Virus record (IMG/VR): IMGVR_UViG_3300025121_000282
Coordinates: 62,001-126,000 of that record
Strand: one strand, 5' to 3'
DNA: 64,000 nucleotides
Shown: piece after piece, positions 35,416-58,596 of the stretch
Numbering within the stretch: the stretch's first letter is position 1
Layout: every line of letters begins with the position of its first letter
Translations under genes and position numbers: made by a program
The notes under the pieces: model-generated
Databases searched by the model: none
What the model saw: the letters and a program-made list of their open reading frames with translations, nothing else
Told to the model about the DNA's origin: nothing

Positions 35416-35421
35416 ATAGAG

Positions 35422-35763: not shown

Positions 35764-35854
35764 TCCGTGTTACGGTACCCACACCATAATCCGTGTCGTA
35801 TTACTGCGGGTCAACTACTGCGGAAGGTCTGAAGCCTGATTAACCACAATGCCG

Positions 35855-36346: not shown

Positions 36347-36360
36347 GGGCTACTATTCCC

Positions 36361-36663: not shown

Positions 36664-36715
36664 AACTATGAGCCAGTTGTAGGCCTCTTTGCGGTCTTCT
36701 CGTCACTGCTCAGTA

Positions 36716-37156: not shown

Positions 37157-37170
37157 TGCAGTACTCCCAA

Positions 37171-37662: not shown

Positions 37663-37686
37663 TGAAAGAAACCACCTGGAGAAAAA

Positions 37687-37769
37687 TGGAGCCGGGTGTG
37701 GGATTCGAACCCACGGTGTGGGATTCCGCCTTACAAGGGCGGTGCCGTCGACCGCTTGGCTAACCCGGC
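37687..37769 (-). tRNA. trnT: tRNA-Thr(UGU) with expanded variable region
   Basis: G1-C72/C2-G71, loop CU-UGU-AA, U73, CCA; 11-nt variable region. Confidence 0.85.
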
Positions 37770-37794
37770 AGAAACACAATTGTACATGGCAATT

Positions 37795-37965
37795 GGAAAT
37801 GCTGATTTTGAAGGCCCCAGGACTTCCACCTGGACACCACTTTTGATCGTGGCTGCTAGCGCAGACTCTAGAATCTGCGGCCAGTGTTGGGCACCGCTTA
37901 ATGACCACTTGGCGGGGCACAGAGCACCGGTCTTACAATAGGCCTTCAAAATCAGCACTTCTCCA
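37795..37965 (-). ncRNA. candidate multibranch ncRNA (~170 nt)
   Basis: 16-bp perfect stem 37801-37816/37941-37956 enclosing several hairpins. Confidence 0.5.
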
Positions 37966-37998
37966 GTGCCCAGGCGTTACAAAGTGTCCGTACTTTCC

Positions 37999-38519
37999 GG
38001 ACTGTCACCCCTTCCTCAAGCAAGCTGCCTTGTAGGTGCATACTTGAGAATTTGGTCAGGCCCAGAGTTGGAACCTGTGACTCAAACAGCTAGCTAGGCC
38101 GTTAAAGTCAAGTACCCAATGGCGAAGCACATGCCATCAGGAGGGTGTGGAACCTGCTGTGCTAACAGGGCAGAGAACCGGGTCTGCGGACCGGTTCACA
38201 ATAGCCACTCATTTGAGCCTTAGGCTTTCGCCACGTAGTCCTGCCGGAAAGTCTCATGGGAAATGGCATCCCACTTTTCATCGTAGGTTGAAGTCCACGG
38301 CTTTGTCTTCCGATGCACCTTTTAGTGCTGAGGGCGGGTGACTCCCTTTCGGTCGTAAAAACCGAATCTTGCCAACACCAACATGGTTATTGCAACCCGC
38401 CCGAACACCCCATGCGGGGCTCAAATGCAGGGTGCTCTGCTATCAACCACTAAGCAGATTCCTGTGAGCGGAGTAGGCCTTTTAGTTGCCTAGTCCCGGC
38501 TTTTATACGGGACAGTCCC
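37999..38519 (-). ncRNA. candidate large structured ncRNA (~520 nt)
   Basis: Terminal gggactgtc/gacagtccc pairing, about ten short internal hairpins, no credible ORF. Confidence 0.5.
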
Positions 38520-38527
38520 TAGGGGAA

Positions 38528-38992
38528 CTAAACCTTTGCAGTTCTGGCGCGCTTGAAACCTAGCAGGCTGATTTGATTGATCCTGGCCTTGTAAAGCACG
38601 CCACCACTCTCGCCACGAGCTTCCAGGAAAGCAATACCGGTGGCGACACTTTCAATCAGGGCATCCAATTCTATGTTCGATAAATGATCAGCCCGGTCAA
38701 ACCTTTCCCAGGCTTTTTTGACGCTTTGATTGCTGATCATCTGCTTGGGGTTGGACACCTCAGCACGAATCAAATCATTGGTTTCCATAGTTCTTGTGTC
38801 ATTGCAATGTGAGAAGGCGTCTATTCGCTCCCTCAAGATCTCGCTGTACGCAGTCATATGGGTTATTTGGAGTACAATCCGCGCCCGTTCGTGTTCCTTG
38901 AGTTTGGAGAATATTTCATCGTTGATGAGAAAGGACAACTTGGCGATCCTTTTGTCTAGTTGTTCCTTCTCGTCCAAAATCTTCTCTATCAT
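38528..38992 (-). CDS. crAss001_48-like N-terminal domain fused to a repeated phage domain
   Basis: EKEQLDKRIAKL...QITHMTAYSEILRERI; C-terminal half similar to 40361-40582. Confidence 0.6.
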   Translation of the reverse strand: MIEKILDEKEQLDKRIAKLSFLINDEIFSKLKEHERARIVLQITHMTAYSEILRERIDAFSHCNDTRTMETNDLIRAEVSNPKQMISNQSVKKAWERFDRADHLSNIELDALIESVATGIAFLEARGESGGVLYKARINQISLLGFKRARTAKV

Positions 38993-39037
38993 CTGGGACT
39001 CCGTGGATATAAAAACCTAGACCTCAGGGGGCTGTAT

Positions 39038-39295
39038 TCAGACCTTCTCCATAGGCTCTACACCCCATCTACACTCCCCGTTCCCACTTTTTGATCTCAG
39101 TGAGAGTGTGGAAACCAACACCGGCTTGTCTTTCAGTGCGGCCAACTTGACTGCATGCTGAAAGCGAGCCATGAAGGGGGTGCTGTCATCCACCAGTTCC
39201 ACCTCAAACCCTGCGGCCTTTAAAGCCTCATTGATAATCAGGGCTATGGTGGTTTTACCCTCACCGGCCTCGCCTGAAATCTGTACCTTAAGCAT
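39038..39295 (-). CDS. small P-loop-containing protein
   Basis: ISGEAGEGKTT. Confidence 0.55.
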   Translation of the reverse strand: MLKVQISGEAGEGKTTIALIINEALKAAGFEVELVDDSTPFMARFQHAVKLAALKDKPVLVSTLSLRSKSGNGECRWGVEPMEKV

Positions 39296-39536
39296 CTGGA
39301 ACTCTTTCGAAAAACGATGGTTAGTGGGCTGAACTAGGAGACATCAACAGCCCCGTAGGAAGCACTCCTCAGTTTTAAAAAGGCGCGTTACGACAAGTTG
39401 GCACTCCAAGATGCGTACGCATTTGAAAACTAACCTGTCTTCCCTTTTGAAAAAGCACACCAGGAGGGACTCGAATAGAGTGGTAATCTTTTTACAGTTC
39501 ACTCTATTCAACCCCTATCAGCTTGTGGACCTGGAA

Positions 39537-40062
39537 ATGAAACTCACTAATTGTACTAACTGTGGTGACTCCACCACAAATCCAAGATTTTGTTCTAACT
39601 CGTGTTCGGCATCATGGGGCAACAAACTAAAGCCCCCATGTCCCAATGAAGAAGAAATGTAAACGTTGTGAAGTTATTATTCCCAGCAGAATAACTTATT
39701 GCACCAAATGTCAAGACCACTTTAAATCAAATACTAAGCGATGGAAAAACGAAACACTGGGTACACTACAGGCACGCCGAGTGTATCAGTCCAACTCACA
39801 AATTCGAGATGATGCTCGTGTGGTAGTGGACAAGCAGGGGTGGGTCAAATGCTGTGCGGTGTGTGAGTACTCTTTACACGTGCAAGTGTGTCACGTTAAA
39901 GCCATCAAAGACCACACGCCAGACACTATTATCTCGGCGATAAATGACCCATCCAACCTGATTTTGTTGTGTTCCAACCACCACTGGGAATTTGACCATG
40001 GCCTCTTGGACATTAAAGAAATTCGTGCTAGGCAGGGATCGAACCTGCGACCACTCGCTTAG
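39537..40062 (+). pseudogene. HNH endonuclease with N-terminal Zn finger, frameshifted at a C5 run (~39633)
   Basis: MKLTNCTNCG...FCSNSCS in one frame, then KKKCKRC...HVQVCH...NLILLCSNHHWEFD; 3' end overlaps tRNA-Arg. Confidence 0.75.
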
Positions 40063-40311
40063 CTTACCACTATAACTTTCGTTACTCTCTTGTGGAGATT
40101 TGTGGCCTGGACTTTGTCTTCACCCGTTCTGGGTGGCCCCCGTCAAGTCTCTACACCTTTTCCCGTTTAATAGGGAACTTGGCTCGGCGTTGTCTCGCTT
40201 CTTTTGAAGGAAGCAGGGAGTTCACCGAATTTGAGGGCATTCACACTAGACATTCCTATCTAGGTGCTCCTATTTCAAAGGCGAGCGCTCTATCCGCTGA
40301 GCTACTAGCAC
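40024..40311 (-). tRNA. trnR: tRNA-Arg(UCU), interrupted by group I intron
   Basis: Exons 40278-40311 and 40024-40062 give loop CU-UCU-AA; A20, G73; no CCA. Confidence 0.9.
40063..40277 (-). ncRNA. group I intron (IC3-like), 215 nt, in tRNA-Arg(UCU) after U34
   Basis: Same P/Q/R/S blocks as the Leu intron; terminal G; covarying P3. Confidence 0.9.
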
Positions 40312-40360
40312 ACAAAATCAATTTGAAAATAGTTACTAGGGAACAAAAGAAAGTTGAGTG

Positions 40361-40582
40361 TTACTCAAGTGGGTTTGGACGGATGGGTCCATCAGGGTCA
40401 TCATTAGTCCATCTAATTCTAGTCCTAAGGGCCTTTAGGTCTAATAAGGTCCTTTGGTCGGATTCGGCCTTATACAAAACACCACCCGTCTCACCCCGCG
40501 CTGATAGGAAAGTAACACCAGAATTGATACTGTCGATCAACTGATTGAGTTCAATGTCAGACAGGTCACCCCCCATGGTCAT
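40361..40582 (-). CDS. hypothetical protein (paralog of the 38528-38992 C-terminal domain)
   Basis: LSDIELNQLIDSINSGVTFLSARGETGGVLYKA. Confidence 0.6.
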   Translation of the reverse strand: MTMGGDLSDIELNQLIDSINSGVTFLSARGETGGVLYKAESDQRTLLDLKALRTRIRWTNDDPDGPIRPNPLE

Positions 40583-40772
40583 ACCTCAGCCATAACTGGT
40601 CTAATTCTGGTGTGGTTTCCATTCTCTGCTCCAAGAATTGAAAAATGGGCTACAAGTGAGTTGACGGTGATGTGACTATCGACCATCGAGCCGCGGCCTT
40701 ACCACAAGTAGGCCACACCGTGGGGACCGGGAGGCTTATACCTGCTTGTAACCCAAACTTTGATGAAAATTG

Positions 40773-40846
40773 TAGCCGCTGAGGGACTCGGACCCCCGAC
40801 ATCCTCCGTGTAGGGGAGGCACTCTAACCAACTGAGTTAAGCGGCC
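40773..40846 (-). tRNA. trnV: tRNA-Val(UAC), atypical C33
   Basis: Cloverleaf, loop CC-UAC-AC, T-loop UCCGAGU, A73, no CCA. Confidence 0.85.
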
Positions 40847-48151: not shown

Positions 48152-48460
48152 TTACTCCTTATTTAGAAATTTCCCCAAGAACACATACAATTTTTCAGCT
48201 TCTTTTTTACCTAGAATGGTGCAGTCCCAATGACCGTACCTCGATTGATGACCAAACACGTATTTGGTGGCCATCACAACCCGTTTATACCACGGATTGC
48301 ACGGGTTCAGTTGTACACTTGTGTAACAGCACTCTTCGGGCTCCCCCTCTTCGGGCTCGAACTGCACAAACTGCAAAATGTGTTCTGTGCTGCTGCACTC
48401 ACACACCACATGTAAAGTTGTGATGAAATCTTGTGGAGACATTTTAGTGGACAATCCCAA
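48152..48460 (-). CDS. hypothetical protein
   Basis: 102 aa ORF, CECSSTEH. Confidence 0.55.
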   Translation of the reverse strand: MGLSTKMSPQDFITTLHVVCECSSTEHILQFVQFEPEEGEPEECCYTSVQLNPCNPWYKRVVMATKYVFGHQSRYGHWDCTILGKKEAEKLYVFLGKFLNKE

Positions 48461-48809
48461 TTCAGTCTGGTGGGTTTATGTGATTCAAAGTCTGGTAGAA
48501 CGGAGAGGGAAACGCGGTAATCCCCTCCCCGGCTTCTATTATGTTGGGTCAACCACTGATCCTACAAGAAGAATACGTCAGCATAACGGCCTCAAGAAGG
48601 GAGGCGGGAAGTATACCTTCAAGGCCCGTCCTTGGGTTCCCCGCGCCCTCTACGGTCCGTATTGCAACAGGAGTGAGGCCCTAAGGGCAGAGATGGCTCT
48701 CAAGCACAACAAAAGGGGTGTGGAAAGAATCAAGTGGTCCATTAATGACCACCATTTGTGCAGAGGCTTGGGACCCGATGACCCCTGGGTCACTTCTTCA
48801 AAACCCTGA
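48423..48809 (+). CDS. GIY-YIG nuclease (SLX1-like)
   Basis: WVYVIQ...YYVGSTTDPTRRIRQHNG...GGGKYT...EALRAE; start uncertain. Confidence 0.85.
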   Translation: MKSCGDILVDNPNSVWWVYVIQSLVERRGKRGNPLPGFYYVGSTTDPTRRIRQHNGLKKGGGKYTFKARPWVPRALYGPYCNRSEALRAEMALKHNKRGVERIKWSINDHHLCRGLGPDDPWVTSSKP

Positions 48810-49094
48810 TCACACCTTTGGGTGTGGTTCTATTTTATTTAATAAATCGGGATACGTTGACTCGGTTACTTCCAAGTCATACTTATTTTGCAGTTCCAGC
48901 CAGTATTCTGCTGGTACTTTGAGAAACTTGGACAAACGTAGAGCCACCTTAGCGGTCATGGGGCTCATCCCATTAACTATTCGCCATGCCTGTCTGTCTG
49001 ATATTTTGATATGTTGAGCTAGCAAATACTCCGTCAAGTCCAGAGGCTTCAAAAATTGTTGTCTCAACACAGTACCAGGATGCGGGTTATTCAT
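48810..49094 (-). CDS. higA: orphan HigA-family antitoxin
   Basis: PHPGTVLRQQFLKPL...IVNGMSPMTAKVALRLSK...AEYWLELQNKYDL. Confidence 0.85.
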   Translation of the reverse strand: MNNPHPGTVLRQQFLKPLDLTEYLLAQHIKISDRQAWRIVNGMSPMTAKVALRLSKFLKVPAEYWLELQNKYDLEVTESTYPDLLNKIEPHPKV

Positions 49095-49593
49095 ACTCCA
49101 CCGTAATTTTTATAGTCTTCTCACCGGGCAATTTTATTCTTGTAATGTGCTTGTCTACATGTTCGGTACCCAAGCCGCCAGCGCCCCAATGAGAACCTAC
49201 TGCGCCAATTTCGGGTCCGTATGAGTGTGGTGGCACCAAATAGGCAGCTTGGCACATTATGTTGGAAGCCAGATAGTGTGTTAATGGTCTATCCGAGTCC
49301 CGTTTTGCAGCGGTGTTCCACTCTTCAAATGACCTACCGACAATCTTCTGAACTTCCTGGTCATTGGGGTTTAGCCTAGAAATATCAGTTGTTACCCTGT
49401 GCAAAGAGACACTTCCACCCTCTTTTGGTGGTGTTGGAAAGTCCTTGCTCAGTTCAACGGATTTTGTGTCCCAGTTATAAACAACCCAAAATGTTAACTG
49501 TCTCTCTTGCATTTGTACCACCTCTATACCATTATACAGAGGATTCTTTTTTATGTGTCGGAAGGGATATAAAAAATTTGGACCCCCTGTCAA
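49087..49593 (-). CDS. hypothetical protein
   Basis: 168 aa ORF; start uncertain. Confidence 0.5.
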   Translation of the reverse strand: MTGGPNFLYPFRHIKKNPLYNGIEVVQMQERQLTFWVVYNWDTKSVELSKDFPTPPKEGGSVSLHRVTTDISRLNPNDQEVQKIVGRSFEEWNTAAKRDSDRPLTHYLASNIMCQAAYLVPPHSYGPEIGAVGSHWGAGGLGTEHVDKHITRIKLPGEKTIKITVEYE

Positions 49594-51064
49594 CTTCTGA
49601 TTCCAATCTTATGGTGCCACCAAGTCTCTCTATTATCATTTTGGTCAAGTACAGCCCAACACCAGTACCTGGAAATTCTGTGGTCAGTCTCTCAAATAAC
49701 AAAAACAACTTTTTGTGATACACAGGGTCTATGCCCACCCCGTTATCTTCTACTACCACAACAGGTGCAAAACTTTGTGGGTCGGCGATGACATGTATTT
49801 TTACCATTTTTACAATACTTTTGTTAAATTTGAGACCGTTATCTATGAGATTGTTGAAGGCCTCTGTTAAAAGTGTTTGATCTCCCAACACCATAGGAAG
49901 GTCTGAACTTATTTTTATGTAACAATCTGAGGCTTCTCTACAGTACGCCAGCCTCATAGGCCTGAGTATGGTGTTCAGGTCTACTGGAAGCGCCTTCATA
50001 TTTTTTAATTTTCGTATGTCAGACACCTTGTGGAGACCATCTATTATGTCGGATAGCAGTACTGCATCTTGTTTTATGTCCGTAATGTACTCTTGCATCC
50101 CATCTGGAAGTTTAAAGTCTTCCTCTATTATCTGCGCAGCACCCAAGATGCTGCGAGGCGGACTTCTTAATTGGTGTGCTGCCACATTAGCAAAACCAGA
50201 TAAAGCAACATTCGCCTGTTCTAGCTCGTGTATGGTGTTTTTTAGGTGTTCTTGTTGTTTGACAAACTCAGTCAGGTTCGTTGCGCTCATGTACATACCC
50301 CCGGATTGGCGGTCCCGGGTTATACTCCACAATAAGTGTACCCTGTTACCATTGGCTGTTCGTGTTTTTGCTTTTGCTCTTGTTATTTTTGTAAAACTGT
50401 CCACCTCCTCTTCCTCAAATTCTTCCTCAAATTCTTCCTCAAATTCTATCCATTCTTTCCACGGTCTACTTGTCAATTCTAGTTCTGACCGCCCCAATAG
50501 CTGTTGGAGGCCCTTACTTACAAAAGACCATTTCTCAAGATCAGTGGGTCGAGTCGTGGCAACCAACTCTAGCCCCACTAATAACCAGTACTTGAGGTCT
50601 ATGTCCCTTTTGTGGTGTTCGCTTATATCCCTTGCTGTAGCATATACCTGAGTTCCATCAGACGCAGCCGTCCATTCCAGGTATACTTCTGCCTTGTCTT
50701 TTCGTATGTATCTGTTTACAAATCCCATCGTGTGGTGGTCTATATTTTGTAGCGCAACAGCTTCTTTTATAGTCTTCTCTCTGTCTTGTGGGTGTACAAA
50801 GTTAATAAGTGGTTTTGACTTGAGTTCCTCTAATGAGTACCCAATAGTTTTAACCCACCCTTTAGACAAAAATGTGAACACACCATTTGAGACGGTGCAA
50901 TGCAAATCACTAGAACTGTTAAACCATTTGTCCAGTAGTTCTTTTTGATTTTTGTACTCTAAAGATTTTTTGTAATATTCTGTTTTTTTAAGCCAAAAAA
51001 GAAAATACGGTAATACCAACAAAAATAGCAACACCCAGTCATGGAACTCTAATTCTTGAATCAT
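49532..51064 (-). CDS. membrane-anchored PAS-domain sensor histidine kinase
   Basis: TM helix, PAS (LGYSLEEL...VHPQDRE), H-box AAHQLRSP, N-box NLIDNGLKF, DNGVGI, GTGVGL. Confidence 0.9.
   Translation of the reverse strand: MIQELEFHDWVLLFLLVLPYFLFWLKKTEYYKKSLEYKNQKELLDKWFNSSSDLHCTVSNGVFTFLSKGWVKTIGYSLEELKSKPLINFVHPQDREKTIKEAVALQNIDHHTMGFVNRYIRKDKAEVYLEWTAASDGTQVYATARDISEHHKRDIDLKYWLLVGLELVATTRPTDLEKWSFVSKGLQQLLGRSELELTSRPWKEWIEFEEEFEEEFEEEEVDSFTKITRAKAKTRTANGNRVHLLWSITRDRQSGGMYMSATNLTEFVKQQEHLKNTIHELEQANVALSGFANVAAHQLRSPPRSILGAAQIIEEDFKLPDGMQEYITDIKQDAVLLSDIIDGLHKVSDIRKLKNMKALPVDLNTILRPMRLAYCREASDCYIKISSDLPMVLGDQTLLTEAFNNLIDNGLKFNKSIVKMVKIHVIADPQSFAPVVVVEDNGVGIDPVYHKKLFLLFERLTTEFPGTGVGLYLTKMIIERLGGTIRLESEVDRGSKFFISLPTHKKESSV
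50409..50446. repeat. 12-bp tandem repeat (about 3 copies) encoding EFEE in the kinase linker
   Basis: (tcttcctcaaat)n gives EFEEEFEEEFEEEE. Confidence 0.8.
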
Positions 51065-51498
51065 GACCTTGGCAAAAAAGCATGGTCTATCCAGAATGTA
51101 CCCAGTGCGTGTATCACATCCTCAAACTCTTTGGGGTCTATTGGTTTTCTTAGATATGCATTTGACCCTGCTGCGTGGGCCTCGTCTACGTCTGAGTCAC
51201 TAGACGACGTAGTAAACACTATAACTGGTATTTTTATTAGAAGTGGGGATGCTCTCATTTCTCTCAATACCTCTATACCATTCTTTAAAGGAAGCATCCA
51301 ATCCAACAAAATCAAATCCGGACGTTCAACGCCGGAATACACATTTCTTTGAAACAAGTAATCCAGTGCTGACACTCCGTCCTCCACTACATCAACCGGA
51401 ATGTGTCCCCACCCTAATTTGTTCAGTGCTCGGATAACTTGTCTGGCATCCTGCTTTCGGTCTTCTACTAAAAGCAAGTGATGGGGTGTTTTTCTCAT
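51061..51498 (-). CDS. single-domain response regulator (Rcp1/CheY-like receiver)
   Basis: LLVED, PDLILLDW, NGIEVL, FTTSS, YLRKP; ATG at 51498 overlaps the upstream TGA. Confidence 0.9.
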   Translation of the reverse strand: MRKTPHHLLLVEDRKQDARQVIRALNKLGWGHIPVDVVEDGVSALDYLFQRNVYSGVERPDLILLDWMLPLKNGIEVLREMRASPLLIKIPVIVFTTSSSDSDVDEAHAAGSNAYLRKPIDPKEFEDVIHALGTFWIDHAFLPRS

Positions 51499-52013
51499 TT
51501 GCCCACCACCCCTATAATATCGGCTAAACTTATCCCTGCGATTTTCATCACTATAGCCGCAAACAACAGTGACACAGCTAATACTATGTACCTCCCACCA
51601 ACATTCCACACGGCTTGAGCACCCAGTACTACTAAACTCCGTTCTTGCTTTCTTTCCCCCAGTTCAGACCGAATAATCTCTTGTATCAGTGCCCTTTCTT
51701 CTTTGCCTGCGTCTGCATTTGTCTCTTTGCGGTCTTTTCTCTCTTCTCCTAGTAACTCGAAAATTCGGGCTAATTCATTTCGTCTGGTGACCTCTGCACC
51801 TTCTGACATCAATTTTAATTCTGAGATTGAGCGGTCCAGGTTATCCAGTTTAGCCACTATATTGGTTGTAGCTTCTCGCAGCGTCTGTCTATTAACGACA
51901 GACTCGTTTTGGTAAGAGCTTATAGTTGCGGTTATGGTGGCCATAACCTCTGTGCTTTTTACCAACACAGATAACACCGCATTTGTTGATGGTGAGCTGG
52001 GGTCTTCTGACAC
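51495..52013 (-). CDS. coiled-coil protein with C-terminal TM helix
   Basis: Heptad-rich body, hydrophobic C-terminus; ATGA-coupled to the response regulator. Confidence 0.65.
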   Translation of the reverse strand: MSEDPSSPSTNAVLSVLVKSTEVMATITATISSYQNESVVNRQTLREATTNIVAKLDNLDRSISELKLMSEGAEVTRRNELARIFELLGEERKDRKETNADAGKEERALIQEIIRSELGERKQERSLVVLGAQAVWNVGGRYIVLAVSLLFAAIVMKIAGISLADIIGVVGK

Positions 52014-52024
52014 GGGTCTCTCAC

Positions 52025-52069
52025 TAGTTCAGGTGTGGTTTGCCGGTCGAGGCAGTCACACCTGAACTA
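52025..52069. promoter_or_regulatory. 13-bp inverted repeat immediately upstream of the two-component operon
   Basis: tagttcaggtgtg / cacacctgaacta with inner tgcc/ggca stem. Confidence 0.4.
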
Positions 52070-52155
52070 TAATAGAACCCTTAACGTAGGATGGGGCTGT
52101 ACGGAACAAAGAAAGGGGGCCTATAATAAGAGGGATTGTTTTGACGGCGGCCGGT

Positions 52156-52494
52156 CTACTTATCGCATTTGCCGCATGGGGGAGGACACCGGACGTGACT
52201 AGCAAACTCCGTCCAACTTATACTATATGGGACCACAGCAACATAGCTGGGGTCTTTCAAACCTTTTTCCAGTTCTGTTTTAACAGAATCGACCTCTTGC
52301 TTTTGTGCTTTAATCCCTCCGGGTTTAAACACGCTGATAACAGCACCCACAGGGACCTCAACCCAGTGTAAAGCAGACCCCACCACCACAATGTGTTCAG
52401 GGTCGCCCTTGGCTTTTTCCAGTTCCGACTTGATGTGTGCCAGTTCAATGGGGTCGGCTTCGGGGGCACACCAGACAATGGTACTATTCCGCAT
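52156..52494 (-). CDS. hypothetical protein with internal duplication
   Basis: IKSELEKAKGDPEHIVVV / VKTELEKGLKDPSYVAVV. Confidence 0.55.
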   Translation of the reverse strand: MRNSTIVWCAPEADPIELAHIKSELEKAKGDPEHIVVVGSALHWVEVPVGAVISVFKPGGIKAQKQEVDSVKTELEKGLKDPSYVAVVPYSISWTEFASHVRCPPPCGKCDK

Positions 52495-52503
52495 CTATTT
52501 AAC

Positions 52504-52731
52504 TCAATCCTCTGTGGTTTCGGGTTTCAGCTTGGCTTTGACTGACAGACCCAAGGTTGTGAGTCTGTACCAGAAGTTTGGCATCCCGTCGACGGTGCTT
52601 TCAAGTGGGCGGGCCTCAATGAGACCCATTCTTTCCGCTTCATCTGTTGTGGGTCCAGCCAAAAAACTCGGCATTACGTCACCGGATTGGTCGGTAGTAC
52701 GAATGAGGTCCTCAATATTAGTTGTTTTCAA
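52504..52731 (-). CDS. hypothetical winged-helix-like protein
   Basis: AERMGLIE...WYRLTTLG. Confidence 0.45.
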   Translation of the reverse strand: MKTTNIEDLIRTTDQSGDVMPSFLAGPTTDEAERMGLIEARPLESTVDGMPNFWYRLTTLGLSVKAKLKPETTED

Positions 52732-53086
52732 GTTCTACACATTCCTTAGAAGATTCAGGCCACGCATATACGTTATAGGGTAAAAACTGCGGAAGGTGGT
52801 ATACTACTTCCACGTCCAGGTCAGGTATGTGTGTCACAAACTTGGAATTTAACTGTTCACAAGCCACAGTTGCCACACCACTGTCTCCAGTGGCCTCTTC
52901 CGTAGCAATCCACATTCCGTCGTGACTACCCTCACCGCGGACCTCGTTATTTTGGTCCAAAGTAATAAACACATCCCCTGCCTTAATGTCTCCCATATCA
53001 ACTACGTTCCATTCCAGGCGTAAAACCCTGGCCATGGGGTTGTTGGCGTTGTGAGGTCTAGGAGAATTGACGACGTTGATTTTCAT
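52718..53086 (-). CDS. hypothetical protein
   Basis: 122 aa ORF. Confidence 0.55.
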   Translation of the reverse strand: MKINVVNSPRPHNANNPMARVLRLEWNVVDMGDIKAGDVFITLDQNNEVRGEGSHDGMWIATEEATGDSGVATVACEQLNSKFVTHIPDLDVEVVYHLPQFLPYNVYAWPESSKECVELENN

Positions 53087-53099
53087 TGATTTTCCTGTC

Positions 53100-53550
53100 T
53101 AAAACTAAAGAAGGGTGCTAACCTAGGGCGTGTATCTGTTGGCGTGGAGGCTTCTGCCTGGGTATAACCCGACTGACCAGACACGAAGACGGGAAGGTGT
53201 TCCTACTGGTTGCGGGGTTGGACCCGTTCCTCTTTGTGCAGTTTTAAGGCTGACTCGCTTGGCCACCACTGCTTGTCCGATAGGTTTTAGCCCAAGGACG
53301 TTTTCCTGCGAGTCTTCGTACTGCCAACCTCCAAAACCCAGTTGTGTGGCATACTAGTGCCAGATTGTACTGGGGGTTTAGAATTAGAGGGCCGGGGCAG
53401 GATTCTCACCTGCCGGATTCTCACCGACTCAAGAACGTTTCCTTCTCTTCCCACAAGTGGAAGAGAGTATTGCTCACAACTAACGTTCTTTGCAGCAATT
53501 CCCAGGTGTCATCACCCCGAGACTGTCTCCCGCTCCAGTATTATTCTACA
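53100..53550 (-). ncRNA. candidate structured RNA with tandem T-loop-like hairpins
   Basis: Intergenic gap with many stems; CGG-UGAGAAU-CCG and GCAGG-UGAGAAU-CCUGC in tandem. Confidence 0.45.
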
Positions 53551-53576
53551 ACGAGCAGCCGTTGTTAATGGCTTGT

Positions 53577-53813
53577 TTATGAGTGGCGCCCGCTGTCACA
53601 CTTTTCTCTTTTGAAAGAATCCGCACCACAGATGTGACAGAATCGATTCCAATTTGGCATTTTGAATTTATATTTGCGTCCGGACGGGTCTCTTGCAGTG
53701 ACCATGCTTTTTCCTACTTCTCTCCTATAATAGAAGGTACTTATAGCAAACGCACCGCCCGCCAATCCTACAAGAAAAGAGCATGATGCTACATAGACCA
53801 TTACAGCAGTCAT
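53577..53813 (-). CDS. small membrane protein with Cys motif
   Basis: N-terminal TM; CHICG. Confidence 0.5.
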   Translation of the reverse strand: MTAVMVYVASCSFLVGLAGGAFAISTFYYRREVGKSMVTARDPSGRKYKFKMPNWNRFCHICGADSFKREKCDSGRHS

Positions 53814-54583
53814 ACTATCTCCAGGTTGGACCCCATCTTGTCTATGATCTGCTGGAAAGTGAGGTCACACAACTCGTCCTTCCAGTCTCCCACAAAGTAT
53901 AACTTTCTAGAACCCCGTACAACACCAAAAAGAATTGGGTCTTTCAAGGCTTCCCGGTCTTTCTTGAGGGTGCCTCGATTTTCGGGGTCATAGTGCAGCA
54001 CCACATAATTGTCGAACAACTTCAATTCATCGCACTTTACTTTTGCTTCTACTGCTTCGTTGGGTATAGGTCTTACAAAATTTTTGATCCAGTCCAGACA
54101 CAGGGCCCTGTCGGCCACAGCCGTAAATTGCAGTAATTGCTTCTCAGAAATATACTTCTTCATCCCCAAAGCAAAAAGAGTATTTTCAAACTTACGTACT
54201 TCAGACTCTTCGTCTATACTATCCACTAGAGAGGTCTGCCCCGCCAAAACAGCCCTCCCCCTCAATTCCAAGACTTTATTTTCCCTATCCTCGAAGATTT
54301 TGAGTTCTTCTGGATTTAGTAAAATCTGTTCGAAAATCTGTTTGATTTTGACAGGAGGTGTAATCTTCTCCTTTCTATAAAAAAGTCGTTTGTACCACGG
54401 TGGCCTTGGTATCGAACCATTTTCTACAGAAAAACTCCCCACAGAAATAAACGTATCTCTGATGTTTATAGTGTCCAAAGATTTCTGGACAAAATTCTTG
54501 GGTAGAGAGAGGTCCACCTCAAATCGATTGAAAATTATAAGAGAATCAGGCGGGTTAGGTACACCTAGCGTGGAGATCGGCAT
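53810..54583 (-). CDS. hypothetical phage protein
   Basis: ATG at 54583 overlaps the upstream TAA; DPILFG...LYFVGDW. Confidence 0.65.
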   Translation of the reverse strand: MPISTLGVPNPPDSLIIFNRFEVDLSLPKNFVQKSLDTINIRDTFISVGSFSVENGSIPRPPWYKRLFYRKEKITPPVKIKQIFEQILLNPEELKIFEDRENKVLELRGRAVLAGQTSLVDSIDEESEVRKFENTLFALGMKKYISEKQLLQFTAVADRALCLDWIKNFVRPIPNEAVEAKVKCDELKLFDNYVVLHYDPENRGTLKKDREALKDPILFGVVRGSRKLYFVGDWKDELCDLTFQQIIDKMGSNLEIV

Positions 54584-54837
54584 TACTGTCTCTTTTTTGC
54601 TCTGCCATTGGGGCAAATACACGGTCCTTGAACTGTGACCCGCTGATGCCCAGGAGGAAGACCGCATGGAGGAAATGGTGTGATTACAGCTAGGTACCCT
54701 GTGTTGCCGCACAAGCCGCACAGAGGAGTTGGAATGTGTGGTGTTGCATTGTTGATGCACACCATTACAATGAACTCTTCCCACAAATTAGATGCGTCGC
54801 CCATAAAATCATCCCGCTTCCTCGAAGCTATTTTCAA
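54583..54837 (-). CDS. hypothetical Cys-rich protein
   Basis: CGLCGNTG and CICPNG motifs. Confidence 0.5.
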   Translation of the reverse strand: MKIASRKRDDFMGDASNLWEEFIVMVCINNATPHIPTPLCGLCGNTGYLAVITPFPPCGLPPGHQRVTVQGPCICPNGRAKKRQ

Positions 54838-55101
54838 TCACATGTTGGGGACGTCGAAAATAGCTTCTCCGTACACCTCGTTTTGCTCGTCTGCGTAGTT
54901 GTCATTATACAGATTCCTCCCGCCTGTCACTGCGTTGTAGTCATGACACGAAGTGCGGGACGGGGTTACTCTGTCTAGCGCTGCAACTTGCTTCTCGGTT
55001 AGAAACCCGTGCCGCCTATAATAGTTATTACACCCTGCCACAAACTCGTTACCCGGGTCTGAATCGCCGGCTCTTTTTAGAGCGTACCTAAACTTATTCA
55101 T
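54838..55101 (-). CDS. hypothetical protein
   Basis: 87 aa ORF. Confidence 0.5.
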   Translation of the reverse strand: MNKFRYALKRAGDSDPGNEFVAGCNNYYRRHGFLTEKQVAALDRVTPSRTSCHDYNAVTGGRNLYNDNYADEQNEVYGEAIFDVPNM

Positions 55102-55457
55102 TGGACATATCCAAATATTTTAGCTTTTGTAATTTCTACGAAATCATGCCCAAGCCATTCAGCTAGTGTTATGTCTCCCTGATGTTCTCTTCTGTACCCA
55201 AAAGAGGGGGTGTCGCTGGATTTCTCGATTTCCACAGCCCTATTCATGGCCGCAATTTCTTCCGGTGACTTAGCGGGGTAGTCATCTTGGGTGTACCTCC
55301 TTACAAAGGTGGCGCCCTTGGTGGACAACACCCATTGCAAAGCCCCCAGTAGTGACAACGATTTTTCTTTAGCTATGACACCAATTACTACTTCCAGTTC
55401 TTCACTATTATTTATTGTTGCAGAGTAACAGTTGGTGTCAAGAAAGAAAGGTTGCAC
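55098..55457 (-). CDS. hypothetical protein
   Basis: 119 aa ORF. Confidence 0.5.
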   Translation of the reverse strand: MQPFFLDTNCYSATINNSEELEVVIGVIAKEKSLSLLGALQWVLSTKGATFVRRYTQDDYPAKSPEEIAAMNRAVEIEKSSDTPSFGYRREHQGDITLAEWLGHDFVEITKAKIFGYVQ

Positions 55458-55460
55458 TTT

Positions 55461-56492
55461 TTAGTTCCTTACGTCCAGTATCTTCTTAACAAGTGCAGCC
55501 TTACCACCCGGAATCTTGGATGCACCGGTTATGTGGAGACCAAAGGATGCGTACTTTCGGAGGTCTTCCAGACTGGATTCCATCAACTTGGCTTCGTTGT
55601 ATTTGTCCATATAAGACCAAGTTTTATCCCCATCAAGAGACTTCGTGGTACTTGGCTTTTCTGGCTTGGCTTTTTTGGTATCGGTCTTTGCAGACTCCTT
55701 CTCGGCCGGAGCGACCTTTTTTGGAGGCGTGGTTTCCTTTACGGGAGTTCTGACCCCCAAGTCCTCTGACTTTATGGTAGTGGAGGGTAAGGGTGCCCCG
55801 TGTACCCCTAGAACCTCGTAGCTGCAAACCCGCATTTTTTGCATACTGCAGTCTTTGGGGATGCAAACCACATCAGCAGGGTCAATTCTGCAGACAACGA
55901 TTTTACTGGAGACCTGCCCAAAGTCCCTGGCGTACTTGAGACTGCCTATGTGCAAACCCTCATGACATGCGACGTCTGGGTCATCAGAAATCTTATTTCT
56001 GGGGAAAGTGGGCTTCTCTCCAGGTTTGTTCAGTATGGTGCCAGAGTGGTGGTCCATCCAGTCGTTTCGTACTGACTTGTAGGCAATGACGAAGCCACTC
56101 TCGTCGATCGGGATCTGGTCATGTTCCATAAACCCATACAACTGCTTCACAGACCGCCATGACGGATTCAACTGTAGACGCTCCCAAAATTTGATCCAAG
56201 GCCACGGGTCTTCGTTTCTCCCTGCCATGGACATGATTCTTTTGGAAAGCTTTGGGTCTATAACTTCACCCTTAAAAAGTATGCTACCATCCACCACCTT
56301 GAACTGGCCATTGGCCCAACTCTCTATAGTTTTGGCTGGTGTCAAACAACTAGGGACTAAATTCCACTCTTCGTTGACTAAATGGGTGCATAACTTCTTG
56401 TAGTTGGGGGCGGACGAACTTACAACGGTAGCCTTACCATCTACAACCACTGTAACCGACCCCGGGGTCATGCTATATGTAATATTCGACAT
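55461..56492 (-). CDS. rIIB: RIIB-like protein
   Basis: FWERLQLNPS...QLYGFM...AYKSVR...DDPDVACHEGLH; directly downstream of rIIA. Confidence 0.85.
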   Translation of the reverse strand: MSNITYSMTPGSVTVVVDGKATVVSSSAPNYKKLCTHLVNEEWNLVPSCLTPAKTIESWANGQFKVVDGSILFKGEVIDPKLSKRIMSMAGRNEDPWPWIKFWERLQLNPSWRSVKQLYGFMEHDQIPIDESGFVIAYKSVRNDWMDHHSGTILNKPGEKPTFPRNKISDDPDVACHEGLHIGSLKYARDFGQVSSKIVVCRIDPADVVCIPKDCSMQKMRVCSYEVLGVHGAPLPSTTIKSEDLGVRTPVKETTPPKKVAPAEKESAKTDTKKAKPEKPSTTKSLDGDKTWSYMDKYNEAKLMESSLEDLRKYASFGLHITGASKIPGGKAALVKKILDVRN

Positions 56493-58596
56493 TTTCTGAT
56501 CCTATTTCTGTTAGCGAATCAATGAGTTTGATGTACTCAACAGCACAGTTTACGAGTTCCTGTTCCCCATCAGAGAAGATGCTGAACCCACCCTTATGTA
56601 GTTTGTGTAACATCGGATACTTTTTCATTGTATCTATAATACCTATTGGTGGAACCACCGTTTTGTCGTTTATAATGCCTCTTATATGCTCCACCAGTGG
56701 GGCTAGAGTTTCGTTCTTATTTATTGTTCTCTCTAGTTGTGTGTACTCGCGGACAACTAGGTACAGTGGGTGCGCTCTGCCTAATAGTTTGGCAAAACGT
56801 TTCTCAATAGATGCTGGGTAGTGCCTAACATTGTGTGGTAGACTGTCTTTGGTGCTTTTTACTCTAGCCATATCATTGTACAAACTGCCCAGGTTCATGG
56901 CAGTCATGGTCTCTTTGGCCCACTCTACCCTCCAGTCTCTATAATGTTTTCCGATACAATCAATACCGGACACTGGTTTCTTTTCGGTTGTTTTGTACCC
57001 ATACACACCGGGCATTTTTAACCCAATACTCTTCATAATGCTGGCGTCGTCTCTATACATACGAATAAAATCGAGACCACACACTTCGAATTTGTCCAGT
57101 ATTACAAACACGTCATTTTTTGACGGGATACGCGTAACAATTTCCCACGAGTCGGAGAATTTGTCACCACGTACACCCGGGTTATACTCAAAACACCTAG
57201 CCCTATAAACCGGGTTGATTGGCCCACATCGTACTTTACCACTCTTGGTACGGACGGTGGTATACGTGTTCTCTTTAGCCCACAAAACTGTAGAAATGTC
57301 AGTTATGGGAACGCCGTCTAAGTTTGCCTCTTTGACGTACTTGTCTAATTCCTCTCTTAAGACTTTAAAATCAACCGGGTCAGGTGCAATTGGGGTGACT
57401 ATGCAGGCATAATCGCCCAGCCCATAACCTTTTATAGACTTAACCTCATTTTTTATGTAGAGAGTTGTACGAGTGTCTACTATGACACTCTGAGAGTTGT
57501 TTTGGATATTCGATATGGTGAACGTCTTAGGCTTGTTTGCCTCAGTGTACAAGGGAACACTTTGAATAGTCCACTTCTGGTACTGTTTGGACAGTCTTAT
57601 GCCAAACCCTTTGCATGTGGTGGACACTTCTAAACGTCTGTGAAAATTGCTGTTGTCAGAACTGGACACTAGTGTTATAAGTGACTCGATGTAGTGTTCG
57701 TACATCTGCCTTATTTTGCTTACTACGGCCTTTATGGTGTAGTCTGAATACCTCAGTTCTTCTCTGCTTGTGGCAGTTTGTACCTCTCCAATGTCAAAGT
57801 ACAACACCCCGCACAATTTTCTTAGACTGCCATATAACTCTTCGTCCTGTAACAGACTTTCAATCTGGTTTAAATCCAGCTTGTACGGAATGGGTCCCAT
57901 TACGGCTGTCCACCCCGTAGAATGATCATTTTTGTCTAAGTATCCATACGGAGTGCCGATGCTAAATTTTCTCAGTTCAGGAATTATAATATTGATGTCA
58001 GGCAGCGGTTTGAAATACTTAAATAACTTAACAGCCCTGGCCTCGAAGTGCTCAATGTCTTTGGGTTTGACTGGCATCTGTACCTCAATGCCAGTCTCGT
58101 CTCCGCATGGCTCTTCGTGTAACTTTTGCATGATGCCAGCATTGGACTCATCCAATACCGCTGAATAAATTTTCTTAAAACCACCATGCCACGATGTAAC
58201 TGTGAACGAATCGGAGTACGCAAATGCTGATTTTGCACCGATGCCATAGTTTCCAGCTTCGTTATTGGTCTCTCTCTTGGTGCTGTCGCCGTACTGAGTA
58301 TAAGTATATAACACCACTTCTTCAGACATGCCAGGGCCCCAGTCCCTGATCATGAGGGTGGGGTTCAAAGGTGTAGGCAGGGTTACCCTAATAGGCAAAT
58401 CATCTTTGCCTATAGACCTGTGAGCGTCCCAGGCATTGGTTGAGTACTCCCGCAGTGGGGCTAGAATTTTATCAGTATAAAGAGTATCGCGTAGAATGGT
58501 CATAATGTGGGTTTCGGCGGCCTTACTTATGCCGAATACACTTACACTGGTAACACCAGACGTGACCAGTGTGCGGTCCTCTACTTCAGTCTTCAT
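56473..58596 (-). CDS. rIIA: RIIA-like protein (N-terminal GHKL/Hsp90-like ATPase)
   Basis: LREYSTNAWDAH, RDWGPGMS, STKR...GNYGIGAKSAFAYSDSFTV. Confidence 0.9.
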   Translation of the reverse strand: MKTEVEDRTLVTSGVTSVSVFGISKAAETHIMTILRDTLYTDKILAPLREYSTNAWDAHRSIGKDDLPIRVTLPTPLNPTLMIRDWGPGMSEEVVLYTYTQYGDSTKRETNNEAGNYGIGAKSAFAYSDSFTVTSWHGGFKKIYSAVLDESNAGIMQKLHEEPCGDETGIEVQMPVKPKDIEHFEARAVKLFKYFKPLPDINIIIPELRKFSIGTPYGYLDKNDHSTGWTAVMGPIPYKLDLNQIESLLQDEELYGSLRKLCGVLYFDIGEVQTATSREELRYSDYTIKAVVSKIRQMYEHYIESLITLVSSSDNSNFHRRLEVSTTCKGFGIRLSKQYQKWTIQSVPLYTEANKPKTFTISNIQNNSQSVIVDTRTTLYIKNEVKSIKGYGLGDYACIVTPIAPDPVDFKVLREELDKYVKEANLDGVPITDISTVLWAKENTYTTVRTKSGKVRCGPINPVYRARCFEYNPGVRGDKFSDSWEIVTRIPSKNDVFVILDKFEVCGLDFIRMYRDDASIMKSIGLKMPGVYGYKTTEKKPVSGIDCIGKHYRDWRVEWAKETMTAMNLGSLYNDMARVKSTKDSLPHNVRHYPASIEKRFAKLLGRAHPLYLVVREYTQLERTINKNETLAPLVEHIRGIINDKTVVPPIGIIDTMKKYPMLHKLHKGGFSIFSDGEQELVNCAVEYIKLIDSLTEIGSENVEYYI

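What the first reader, a model, noticed from the sequence alone, without database searches (positions are those of the whole stretch)
49532..52069. Phage-encoded two-component operon coupled to a membrane coiled-coil protein
Three genes are chained by ATGA overlaps: a coiled-coil/TM protein, a single-domain receiver with intact phospho-Asp and Lys, and a TM-PAS histidine kinase with H/N/G boxes (AAHQLRSP). A 13-bp inverted repeat lies upstream. Complete kinase/regulator pairs are uncommon in phages. The receiver has no output domain, so it probably acts by protein contact or cross-talk with host phosphorelays, for example in lysis timing or superinfection sensing (inference).
Basis: partly seen in the sequence, partly recalled or inferred. 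Interest (0 to 1): 0.7.

Follow-up and report, generated by a model that had tools for sequence, protein, structure and literature searches.

The report
Huge-phage three-gene membrane signalling cassette
A 315-kb uncultivated groundwater phage carries a conserved, apparently phage-only three-gene signalling cassette: a membrane-anchored coiled-coil protein, a stand-alone receiver, and a membrane sensor kinase in which a residue thought to be needed for kinase activity is replaced. The phage therefore runs its own phospho-signalling circuit, but its input and target are unknown.

Summary
On the minus strand, three genes are chained by two ATGA overlaps:
- a 172-aa tail-anchored coiled-coil protein (TMcc, 51495-52013);
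- a 145-aa single-domain receiver (51061-51498);
- a 510-aa TM-PAS-PAS-HisKA-HATPase kinase (49532-51064).

A perfect 13-bp inverted repeat lies at 52025-52069.

The window is part of a complete 314,886-bp phage genome from groundwater.

New findings:
1. The triad is a fixed unit. In more than 20 metagenomic loci, mostly phage-like, every TMcc homologue with enough downstream DNA is followed by the receiver and then the kinase.
2. TMcc is a tiny orphan family: 27 clusters among 1.84 billion representatives. A motif-limited scan of 185,579 bacterial and archaeal genomes found none.
3. The kinases form one clade (100/100 support). All three genes are under strong purifying selection (dN/dS 0.02-0.07), so this is not a recent host fragment.
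4. The receiver is Rcp1/phytochrome-type with all catalytic residues.
5. The H-box is not canonical. The acidic residue after the phospho-His is an invariant Gln (AAHQL[R/K]S). This change abolishes kinase activity but spares phosphatase activity in CrdS, and in NtrB by phenotype.

Best reading: a self-contained phage three-component phosphorelay, possibly phosphatase-biased, that acts by protein contact. Its input, its output and the role of TMcc are unresolved.

The parts
52067..52074 (-). TATTATAG motif (part of the conserved TTCTATTATAG) just 5' of the hairpin; a candidate phage promoter -10-like element (inference)
   Evidence: It is conserved in all three upstream haplotypes. Six of the genome's 15 copies lie on this strand within 5.1 kb around the operon. 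The sigma-70 consensus scan finds nothing here.
52025..52069 (-). Perfect 13-bp inverted repeat (TAGTTCAGGTGTG / CACACCTGAACTA, 19-nt loop), the core of a three-tier hairpin in the 5' leader. Its basal stem pairs with the GAGAGA stretch just before the GTG start.
   Evidence: RNA fold -36.3 kcal/mol, z -6.85. Three haplotypes keep the stem through changes on both sides, T-A to C-G and G-C to A-T. No T-run follows, so it is not a canonical terminator.
51495..52013 (-). TMcc: 172-aa tail-anchored coiled-coil protein, a family-specific orphan
   Evidence: ORF. The same start position is ATG in L005. It matches no Pfam, PHROG or PADLOC family. AF2 predicts a single helix, aa 10-159. Its family has 27 clusters in 1.84e9 representatives. 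dN/dS is 0.074.
51831..51854 (-). TMcc motif AKLDNLDR (aa 54-61; R61 is invariant across the family)
51531..51608 (-). TMcc juxtamembrane motif W136-x-x-G139-G140-x-Y-I-V and the C-terminal transmembrane segment (aa about 136-161)
   Evidence: Hydropathy. W136, G139 and G140 are invariant in 24 family members.
51061..51498 (-). Single-domain Rcp1-type response regulator (145 aa). The phospho-acceptor D66 is encoded at 51301-51303.
   Evidence: Pfam Response_reg, 65 bits. Best solved relatives are 5te9, RcpA 1k68, Rcp1 1i3c and 6xvu, E 1e-21 to 1e-26. E12, D13, D66, T97, S98 and K118 are invariant. It is the only receiver in the genome. dN/dS is 0.016.
49532..51064 (-). Membrane-anchored PAS-PAS-HisKA-HATPase sensor kinase/phosphatase (510 aa)
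   Evidence: Pfam. AF2 model: TM plus linker helix aa 5-50, PAS1 54-146, PAS2 168-263, DHp 265-352, CA 359-500. PDB relatives are HK853 and bacteriophytochrome kinase modules. dN/dS is 0.052.
50990..51043 (-). Kinase N-terminal transmembrane helix (aa about 8-25). Only about 7 residues lie outside it, so there is no periplasmic sensor domain.
   Evidence: Most relatives have two TM helices with a short loop.
50627..50905 (-). PAS1 (PAS_3) domain, aa 54-146
50276..50563 (-). PAS2, a divergent PAS-like domain (aa 168-263). It carries a lineage-specific acidic EFEEEFEEEFEEEE insert at aa about 206-222.
   Evidence: AF2 secondary structure and the family alignment.
50156..50185 (-). H-box VAAHQLRSPP (H297 phospho-acceptor, Q298 at H+1, S301 at H+4)
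   Evidence: Read directly. It is invariant in all family kinases. Of 119 H-boxes among the listed homologues, 99 are H-D and 4 are H-E.
49556..49990 (-). Catalytic ATP-binding (CA) domain with N, G1, F and G2 boxes

Best explanation
This is a self-contained three-component phospho-signalling cassette. It has been inherited and diversified within a group of huge, uncultivated phages.

Shown:
- The three genes are co-oriented and their reading frames overlap, consistent with translational coupling.
- All three are under strong purifying selection.
- They occur together in every sampled lineage.
- The kinase is anchored in the inner membrane by one or two TM helices with almost no external loop. 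Its two PAS domains, the DHp and the CA face the cytoplasm.
- The receiver is a stand-alone Rcp1-type domain with a complete active site.
- TMcc is a tail-anchored protein whose long N-terminal helix most likely lies in the cytoplasm.

Inferred:
- In the infected cell, the kinase reads a cytoplasmic or membrane-state cue through its PAS and TM modules and sets the phosphorylation level of the receiver.
- The receiver has no output domain, so it acts by phosphorylation-dependent protein contact.
- TMcc is the only co-inherited candidate partner. I propose it is the membrane-bound partner of the pair, either scaffold and co-sensor or the receiver's target.
- The residue after the phospho-His is an invariant Gln rather than Asp or Glu. 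The enzyme may therefore work mainly as an ATP-dependent phosphatase or phosphotransferase. The receiver would then be charged partly by other donors, such as host kinases or acetyl phosphate.
For: Anatomy:
- ORFs, overlaps and domains.
- AF2 models.

Fixed triad:
- The order TMcc, receiver, kinase is found in L001, L009, L010, L012, L013, L014, L016, L107-L109 and two contigs without DNA.
- It is also found in all JGI loci with enough downstream DNA, including the most divergent one, L125, on a 270-kb contig.

Restriction to phage-like contexts:
- TMcc has 27 clusters in 1.84e9 representatives and none in 185,579 species genomes.
- Triad-bearing contigs include records from the viral collection (IMG/VR), and L009 and L010 carry small genes, Rho_N and thymidylate kinase.
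- L012's record encodes a DNA polymerase 38-39% identical to this phage's.

Single origin and function:
- The H-Q kinases form one clade with 100/100 support.
- dN/dS is 0.016-0.074.

Receiver type and active site.

The H+1 Gln:
- H+1 Gln is invariant while the N, G1, F and G2 boxes are kept.
- CrdS E372Q is kinase-minus and phosphatase-plus in vitro, and NtrB E140Q gives the matching phenotype in vivo (PMC3510030).
- DrBphP, a natural HisKA enzyme with a non-acidic H+1 and an Rcp1-like partner, is an ATP-dependent phosphatase (PMC8292422). The solved DrBphP-receiver fusion 8avv is among the PDB relatives of both proteins.
Against: - No direct evidence links TMcc physically to the receiver or the kinase. 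The only complex prediction, two TMcc plus two receivers, gave no answer (score 0.18 against a mark of 0.32).
- H-Q H-boxes also occur in bacterial kinases, for example Lachnospiraceae DISHQVKTP and Rhodoferax DAAHQLRTPL. I could not check their activity, so Gln at H+1 does not prove a dead kinase.
- The host is unknown.
- No RNA run was listed that holds the operon, so expression and timing are unobserved.
- PAS ligands cannot be read from the sequence.
- The phage origin of several short contigs is assumed from their gene content, not shown.
Confidence: 0.55

Rival explanations
1. Canonical kinase model. The kinase autophosphorylates normally despite Gln at H+1 and phosphorylates the receiver. 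Receiver~P then binds a host or phage target, for example to time lysis or sense superinfection. TMcc is an unrelated co-transcribed membrane protein or a lysis-related factor.
For: - The His, N, G1, F and G2 boxes and the receiver active site are all conserved.
- Bacterial H-Q kinases exist.
- rIIA and rIIB lie 3.4 kb upstream in this lineage.
Against: - E-to-Q at H+1 abolished autophosphorylation in CrdS in vitro and gave a kinase-minus phenotype in NtrB.
- The strict co-inheritance of TMcc with the pair in more than 20 loci argues against an unrelated passenger.
- TMcc matches no holin, spanin or lysis family.
- The neighbourhood outside the triad is not conserved.
Confidence: 0.2
2. Phosphate-sink model. 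The H-Q enzyme is a dedicated phosphatase. The phage receiver mimics host Rcp1-type receivers and drains phosphoryl groups from one or more host kinases, shutting down a host signalling pathway during takeover. TMcc holds the sink at the membrane, where host kinases sit.
For: - Invariant H+1 Gln with a retained ATP-binding domain.
- Precedent of DrBphP as an ATP-dependent phosphatase acting on an Rcp1-like receiver.
- The receiver is 38-45% identical to bacterial Rcp1-type receivers.
- In L016 a second, canonical H-D kinase and a second receiver sit next to the H-Q triad, which suggests the two kinase types are not redundant.
Against: - This is entirely inferential.
- H+4 is Ser, not the Thr or Asn shown to be needed for phosphatase activity.
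- The host and its kinases are unknown.
- No evidence of cross-phosphorylation exists.
Confidence: 0.18
3. Recent host-derived moron. The operon is a passively carried bacterial fragment with no phage-specific role.
For: - GC content of 50-52 kb is 0.42 against a genome mean of 0.47.
- Two-component genes are typical bacterial genes.
Against: - The nearest bacterial receivers are at most 45% identical, and the nearest bacterial kinases about 30%.
- TMcc has no bacterial homologue.
- The kinase clade is monophyletic with a long stem.
- The triad is kept in phage lineages as far apart as 25-33% TMcc identity.
- dN/dS is far below 1.
Confidence: 0.02

Closest known systems
Cyanobacterial and bacterial phytochrome two-component pairs (Cph1-Rcp1, RcpA/RcpB, BphP with its single-domain receiver)
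   Same: - The receiver belongs to the same subfamily: a single domain with the C-terminal FW...LP extension. Best solved matches are 1i3c/1jlk (Rcp1), 1k68 (RcpA), 6xvu and 8avv at E 1e-20 to 1e-24.
- The kinase DHp-CA module matches bacteriophytochrome kinase modules at E about 1e-13.
- The kinase and receiver genes are adjacent.
   Different: - There is no GAF/PHY photosensory module. The input is a TM anchor plus two PAS domains.
- H+1 is Gln.
- A third, orphan membrane gene is always present.
- The genes lie in a phage genome.
Deinococcus radiodurans DrBphP/DrRR, a natural HisKA enzyme with non-acidic H+1 acting as a phosphatase
   Same: - It is a HisKA protein whose H+1 is not Asp or Glu.
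- It is paired with an Rcp1-like single-domain receiver.
- Its phosphatase activity needs ATP, which would explain a conserved CA domain (PMC8292422).
   Different: - DrBphP has His at H+1 and also a His in place of the N-box Asn. The phage enzyme has Gln at H+1 and keeps both N-box Asn residues.
- The activity of the phage enzyme is untested.
Three-component systems with an accessory membrane protein (LiaFSR, BceRS-BceAB, SaePQRS, WalKR-YycHI)
   Same: - A kinase without an extracytoplasmic sensor domain is co-transcribed with a small membrane protein.
- It may work like these systems, with the accessory protein gating the kinase. The comparison rests on general knowledge plus PMC13473831 for BceS.
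   Different: - There is no sequence similarity to any of these accessory proteins.
- TMcc is tail-anchored with a helix of about 130 residues before its membrane anchor, presumably cytoplasmic.
- The kinase also has two cytoplasmic PAS domains.
- The receiver has no DNA-binding output.
Other phage-encoded host-state sensors (for example the phage VP882 quorum-sensing receptor) and histidine-kinase-like PHROG families
   Same: - A phage carries its own sensory protein, presumably to inform an infection decision (PMC7790227 was listed but not read in detail).
- Kinase-like and receiver-like families exist in PHROGs: phrog_857, 10912, 731 and 20458.
   Different: - Those PHROG families are uncharacterised.
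- I found no published description of a fixed coiled-coil-receiver-kinase triad in phages.

Membership tests
HisKA-family sensor histidine kinase | Phospho-acceptor His in DHp helix 1, with a Pfam HisKA match above the gathering score | tested here: met
   H297. HisKA scores 29.1 bits against a cut-off of 26.9. It aligns to HK853 H260. AF2 predicts a helical hairpin at aa 265-352.
HisKA-family sensor histidine kinase | Acidic residue (Asp or Glu) at H+1, required for autophosphorylation | tested here: not met
   H+1 is Q298. It is Gln in all family members. The requirement is taken from PMC3510030 and PMC8292422.
HisKA-family sensor histidine kinase | Thr or Asn at H+4 (phosphatase determinant) | tested here: inconclusive
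   H+4 is Ser301 (Ala in one member, P0010). Ser is chemically close to Thr, but I found no clear activity data for it. A BceS T128S variant was made, but its effect could not be assigned to kinase or phosphatase activity.
HisKA-family sensor histidine kinase | GHKL ATP-binding domain with N, G1, F and G2 boxes | tested here: met
   HATPase_c scores 72.9 bits. N405, N409, D440-N-G-x-G444, F454/F457 and G466-T-G-V-G-L471 are invariant.
HisKA-family sensor histidine kinase | Autophosphorylation and phosphotransfer activity | not testable with these tools
   Needs biochemistry.
Response regulator receiver domain | Acidic pair, phospho-acceptor Asp, Thr/Ser and Lys of the active site | tested here: met
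   E12/D13, D66, T97/S98 and K118-P119 are invariant in 14 sequences. Response_reg scores 65 bits.
Rcp1-type single-domain receiver (KEGG name Rcp1, as some sources label the homologues) | Stand-alone receiver with the C-terminal FW..LP extension; closest to Rcp1, RcpA and RcpB | tested here: met
   The 145-aa protein has no second domain. The extension aligns through to the chain ends of 1k68, 1jlk and 5te9. Homologues are named Rcp1 by JGI.
PAS domain sensor | PAS fold. The cofactor or ligand defines the signal. | tested here: inconclusive
   PAS_3 scores 40.8 bits for PAS1. PAS2 is seen only in the AF2 model and the family alignment. No cofactor signature could be assigned.
Intramembrane-sensing histidine kinase (short TM module, no other input domain) | Two TM helices with a minimal loop and no cytoplasmic sensor domain | tested here: not met
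   The external loop is minimal or absent. However, two cytoplasmic PAS domains are present.
Holin, antiholin, spanin or other known phage lysis proteins (for TMcc) | Match to a lysis family, or adjacency to an endolysin | tested here: not met
   There is no Pfam or PHROG lysis hit at permissive thresholds. The neighbours are unrelated small genes. Atlas look-alikes (DUF7201, DUF1515) score below 0.9 and are leads only.
Known anti-phage defence or counter-defence systems | Match to PADLOC models | tested here: not met
   There are no hits for TMcc or the kinase. The receiver gives only a weak generic hit, E 2e-5 with no stretch passing on its own.

The most novel reading that the evidence does not exclude
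The cassette is a viral anti-signalling device. The invariant H-Q enzyme is a kinase-dead, ATP-dependent phosphatase. The phage receiver is a decoy that siphons phosphoryl groups from host Rcp1-cognate kinases. The orphan tail-anchored coiled coil tethers this phosphate sink at the inner membrane. Together they would form a phage-specific three-protein machine for switching off a host sensory pathway during takeover.
Probability: 0.15. Interest if true: 0.8.

Novelty: new variant of a known kind. Interest (0 to 1): 0.6.

Why it matters
Two-component systems are the main bacterial sensing device. Phages are usually thought to manipulate them rather than own them.

Here a complete module has been kept as a fixed three-gene unit across a deep radiation of huge phages. 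It has its own orphan membrane partner and a derived catalytic signature. This indicates that these viruses sense or rewire the physiological state of the infected cell with their own circuitry.

It also offers a natural, evolutionarily fixed H+1 Gln HisKA enzyme. This could test how far the acidic-residue rule for autophosphorylation holds. It adds a new protein family (TMcc) that may be a partner of single-domain receivers, whose targets are mostly unknown.

Tried and rejected
- DNA and protein searches of GenBank phages found no close relative of the operon, or of the phage by its DNA polymerase. Only generic kinase and receiver hits at 24-37% identity appeared.
- TMcc was scanned against Pfam, PHROGs and PADLOC at permissive thresholds. 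Only scattered coiled-coil noise and phrog_18217 of unknown function (E about 4e-4) came up.
- ESM Atlas look-alikes of TMcc are viral hypothetical proteins, DUF7201 and DUF1515, all at or below 0.90 (the named DUF families 0.87-0.88). They are leads only, and Pfam scans do not confirm them.
- Complex prediction of two TMcc plus two receivers gave no answer and is not used as evidence either way.
- I looked for covariation between H+1 Gln and the residue before the N-box Asn (DNG). The loci had been selected by that very pattern, so nothing can be concluded.
- I tried to learn from a BceS paper and a PDB search whether a characterised kinase has H-Q. The text did not give H+1 and the alignment was not shown, so this is unresolved.
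- I searched for expression data. No RNA run was listed that holds the operon.
- More distant lineages (L013, L014, L016) have no equivalent upstream hairpin, so the hairpin is lineage-specific.
- The sigma-70 promoter and terminator scans found nothing above chance at the operon's 5' end.
- Literature searches found no description of this cassette.
- The host could not be identified. The best-named bacterial receiver homologues are from Chitinophagaceae and Ferruginibacter at 42-44% identity, which is only a weak hint.


Full report
**1. What is in the sequence**

Window 49532-52069 holds three co-oriented minus-strand genes:
- TMcc, 51495-52013, 172 aa, GTG start;
- a receiver, 51061-51498, 145 aa;
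- a kinase, 49532-51064, 510 aa.

The sequence shows ATGA at both junctions, so each stop codon overlaps the next start codon. The GTG start of TMcc is supported in two ways. The 99.7%-identical contig L005 has ATG at the same position. The residues before the first internal Met are also conserved in homologues.

Pfam results:
- The middle gene matches Response_reg only (65 bits).
- The last gene matches PAS_3 (aa 64-133), HisKA (aa 288-347, 29.1 bits against a cut-off of 26.9) and HATPase_c (aa 394-503).
- TMcc matches nothing.

Hydropathy finds one C-terminal TM segment in TMcc (about aa 141-161) and one N-terminal TM in the kinase (about aa 8-25).

AF2 models:
- TMcc is one continuous helix, aa 10-159.
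- The kinase is a TM plus linker helix (5-50), PAS1 (54-146), a second PAS-like domain (168-263), a DHp hairpin (265-352) and a CA domain (359-500).

**2. The inverted repeat**

A perfect 13-nt inverted repeat with a 19-nt loop lies at 52025-52069, 11 nt before the GTG start. I estimate about 0.05 such repeats by chance in 64 kb.

As RNA, the leader folds into a three-tier hairpin of -36.3 kcal/mol (z = -6.85). Its basal stem pairs with the purine-rich GAGAGA stretch before the start codon.

Only three upstream haplotypes are available: the window, the L001 lineage and the L005 lineage. All three keep the fold, with changes on both sides of at least two stem pairs and G-U wobbles on the sense strand. 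No T-run follows, so it is not a canonical terminator.

I read it as a leader-RNA structure that could limit translation initiation or stabilise the mRNA. That is an inference. More distant lineages lack it.

**3. Context: a phage**

The window is bases 62001-126000 of a single 314,886-bp contig. The contig is held as a virus record rated 100% complete.
- It encodes terminase, DNA polymerase, ligase and helicase genes.
- In the window it has rIIA and rIIB (55461-58596) and six tRNAs.
- It has no close relative among GenBank phages.
- Near-identical DNA occurs in groundwater metagenomes from several samples and studies.

**4. The three genes are a fixed cassette**

TMcc has few homologues. There are five at 90% clustering, and 27 clusters at 50% in 1.84 billion representatives by profile search.

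In every homologue context I fetched, the order is TMcc, single-domain receiver, PAS kinase. The contexts include:
- L001, with 78% TMcc identity and the same rIIA/rIIB neighbourhood;
- L009 (a 109-kb contig) and L010;
- the IMG/VR contigs L012 (169 kb) and L013 (72.8 kb);
- L014 (a 314,050-bp contig), L016 and two contigs without DNA;
- L107-L109, reached from the kinase side.

A JGI metagenome scan added 16 loci:
- All 14 with 600 nt or more of downstream DNA carry the receiver.
- All 12 with more than 1.2 kb downstream carry the kinase.
- This includes the most divergent locus, L125, on a GC-rich 270-kb contig.

Signature motifs recur throughout:
- AK[LIVM][DE]N[LIC]DR and W-x-x-G-G-x-[YWF] in TMcc;
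- LLDW in the receiver;
- AHQL[RK]S in the kinase.

Genes outside the triad are not conserved between sublineages. The kinase input module varies: one TM, two TMs, or an ETR1_N-like three-TM module with three PAS domains. The triad itself is therefore the conserved unit.

A pattern-limited scan of 185,579 bacterial and archaeal species genomes found no TMcc relative.

**5. Not a recent host fragment**

- The closest non-family kinases are about 30% identical over about 63% of the length.
- The closest bacterial receivers are at most 45% identical.
- In a maximum-likelihood tree of 94 DHp-CA cores, the 19 H-Q kinases form one clade with 100/100 support on a long stem.
- Between the window and L001, dN/dS is 0.074 (TMcc), 0.016 (receiver) and 0.052 (kinase), with synonymous sites near saturation.

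**6. The receiver**

Its best solved relatives are phytochrome-associated single-domain regulators: 5te9, RcpA 1k68, Rcp1 1i3c/1jlk, 6xvu, and the receiver part of the DrBphP fusion 8avv.

E12/D13, D66, T97/S98 and K118-P119 are invariant. The C-terminal FW..LP extension typical of this subfamily is also kept.

It is the only receiver domain in the genome.

**7. The kinase and its unusual H-box**

The N box (N405, N409), G1 (DNGxG), F and G2 (GTGVGL) are invariant, so nucleotide binding is under selection.

The H-box reads VAAHQLRSPP. Gln follows the phospho-acceptor His in every family member, including the most divergent one. Among 119 H-boxes in the listed homologues, 99 are H-D and 4 are H-E. 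The 13 H-Q sequences are exactly the phage family.

Published work bears on this:
- The H+1 acidic residue is required for autophosphorylation but not for phosphatase activity. CrdS E372A, E372D, E372G and E372Q all lose kinase activity and keep phosphatase activity in vitro, and NtrB E140Q gives a kinase-minus, phosphatase-competent phenotype (PMC3510030).
- DrBphP has a natural non-acidic H+1 and is an ATP-dependent phosphatase toward its Rcp1-like partner (PMC8292422).

This makes a phosphatase-biased or otherwise non-canonical enzyme a serious possibility. It would also explain why the CA domain stays conserved.

Two caveats apply:
- H+4 is Ser rather than the Thr or Asn shown to matter for phosphatase activity.
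- H-Q H-boxes also occur in bacterial kinases, from Lachnospiraceae, Saccharibacteria, Rhodoferax and others. I could not establish their activities.

In L016 the H-Q triad is followed by a second, canonical H-D kinase and a second receiver. This hints that the two kinase types are not redundant.

**8. TMcc**

The family-wide invariants are R61 in the AKLDNLDR motif of the cytoplasmic helix, and W136, G139 and G140 at the membrane entry.

A cytoplasmic N-terminus is inferred, because the N-terminal part is highly charged and has no hydrophobic leader.

No known family matches. Atlas look-alikes are viral hypothetical proteins at or below 0.90 (the named DUF families 0.87-0.88).

The one complex prediction, two TMcc plus two receivers, returned no answer and is not evidence either way.

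TMcc's role is therefore inferred only from strict co-inheritance and from the overlap or close spacing of its gene with the receiver gene.

**9. Mechanism, committed**

Best-supported reading (0.55): a self-contained phage three-component phosphorelay.
- The membrane-anchored PAS-PAS enzyme reads a cytoplasmic or membrane-state cue in the infected cell.
- It sets the phosphorylation state of the stand-alone receiver.
- The receiver acts by protein contact.
- TMcc is the membrane-bound partner, either scaffold and co-sensor or the receiver's target.

Variants and rivals:
- a fully canonical kinase with an unknown target (0.2);
- a phosphate-sink device that drains host kinases (0.18);
- a passive host fragment (0.02).

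The genes, domains, residues, cassette conservation, selection and phage restriction are shown. Topology, direction of phosphoryl flow, the TMcc partnership, signal and output are inferred.

**10. Novelty**

The components are ordinary two-component parts, and PHROGs already hold uncharacterised kinase-like and receiver-like families. I found no description of this fixed triad, of the TMcc family, or of the invariant H-Q signature in phages.

I rate it a new variant of a known kind. It is of moderate to high interest mainly because it is conserved, phage-restricted and biochemically testable.

Noticed in passing
window 51994-52152: The window and contig L005 are otherwise 99.0-99.85% identical. 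Of 52 differences across 5.2 kb, 45 fall in this 160-nt patch, which covers the operon's leader, the hairpin and the first codons of TMcc. The receiver is identical and the kinase has one synonymous change. This looks like a small recombination patch or a hot spot in the regulatory region. The hairpin is nevertheless kept.
   Followed up: partly
window 51512-56641, minus strand (genome 113512-118641): Six of the genome's 15 TATTATAG copies cluster on one strand within 5.1 kb. Two are TTCTATTATAG copies (52067 and 53725). They may be a phage promoter element, but several copies lie inside coding sequence.
   Followed up: partly
window 48378-49593: Immediately downstream of the kinase lie three genes. 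They are an unknown ORF (168 aa from the first TTG start, called as 141 aa in related contigs), a HigA-like HTH antitoxin overlapping it (48810-49094, phrog_1381 E 1e-21), and a GIY-YIG nuclease on the other strand (48378-48809). This block is absent in the L001 lineage, where a 99-aa gene takes its place. It may be a mobile toxin-antitoxin and homing-endonuclease insertion.
   Followed up: no
window 50399-50449 (kinase aa about 206-222): An acidic low-complexity insert, EFEEEFEEEFEEEE, sits in a loop of PAS2. It is present only in the window and L001 lineages.
   Followed up: no
L016:4327-5765: One relative carries a second, canonical kinase (H-box SHDLQEPIR) and a second receiver directly after the H-Q triad.
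   Followed up: partly
L014:5880-6006: A direct repeat of about 45 nt duplicates the region just upstream of the TMcc start, including the start of the gene.
   Followed up: no
L110 and L124 (contigs Ga0208375_1000024 and Ga0208375_1000332): The same metagenome holds two different phages with the triad. One is the window's own 315-kb genome. The other is a 72.8-kb contig whose kinase has an ETR1_N-like membrane module and three PAS domains.
   Followed up: partly
window 55461-58596 and 28375-40846: rIIA-like (707 aa) and rIIB-like (343 aa) genes lie 3.4 kb upstream of the operon. Six tRNA genes (Glu, Ser, Arg, Gln, Thr, Val) are all on the minus strand.
   Followed up: no
window 53810-54784: A 324-aa ORF has a weak match to a PHROG annotated as transposase (phrog_10081, E 1e-13). 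Related contigs call it as about 257 aa.
   Followed up: no
genome 284678-290385 (L022:9678-15385) and 24999-28199 (L018:4999-8199): Several very long ORFs combine core-function hits with HNH, homing-endonuclease or Mom-like regions. The terminase large subunit ORF is 1066 aa. This suggests inteins or fused mobile elements.
   Followed up: no
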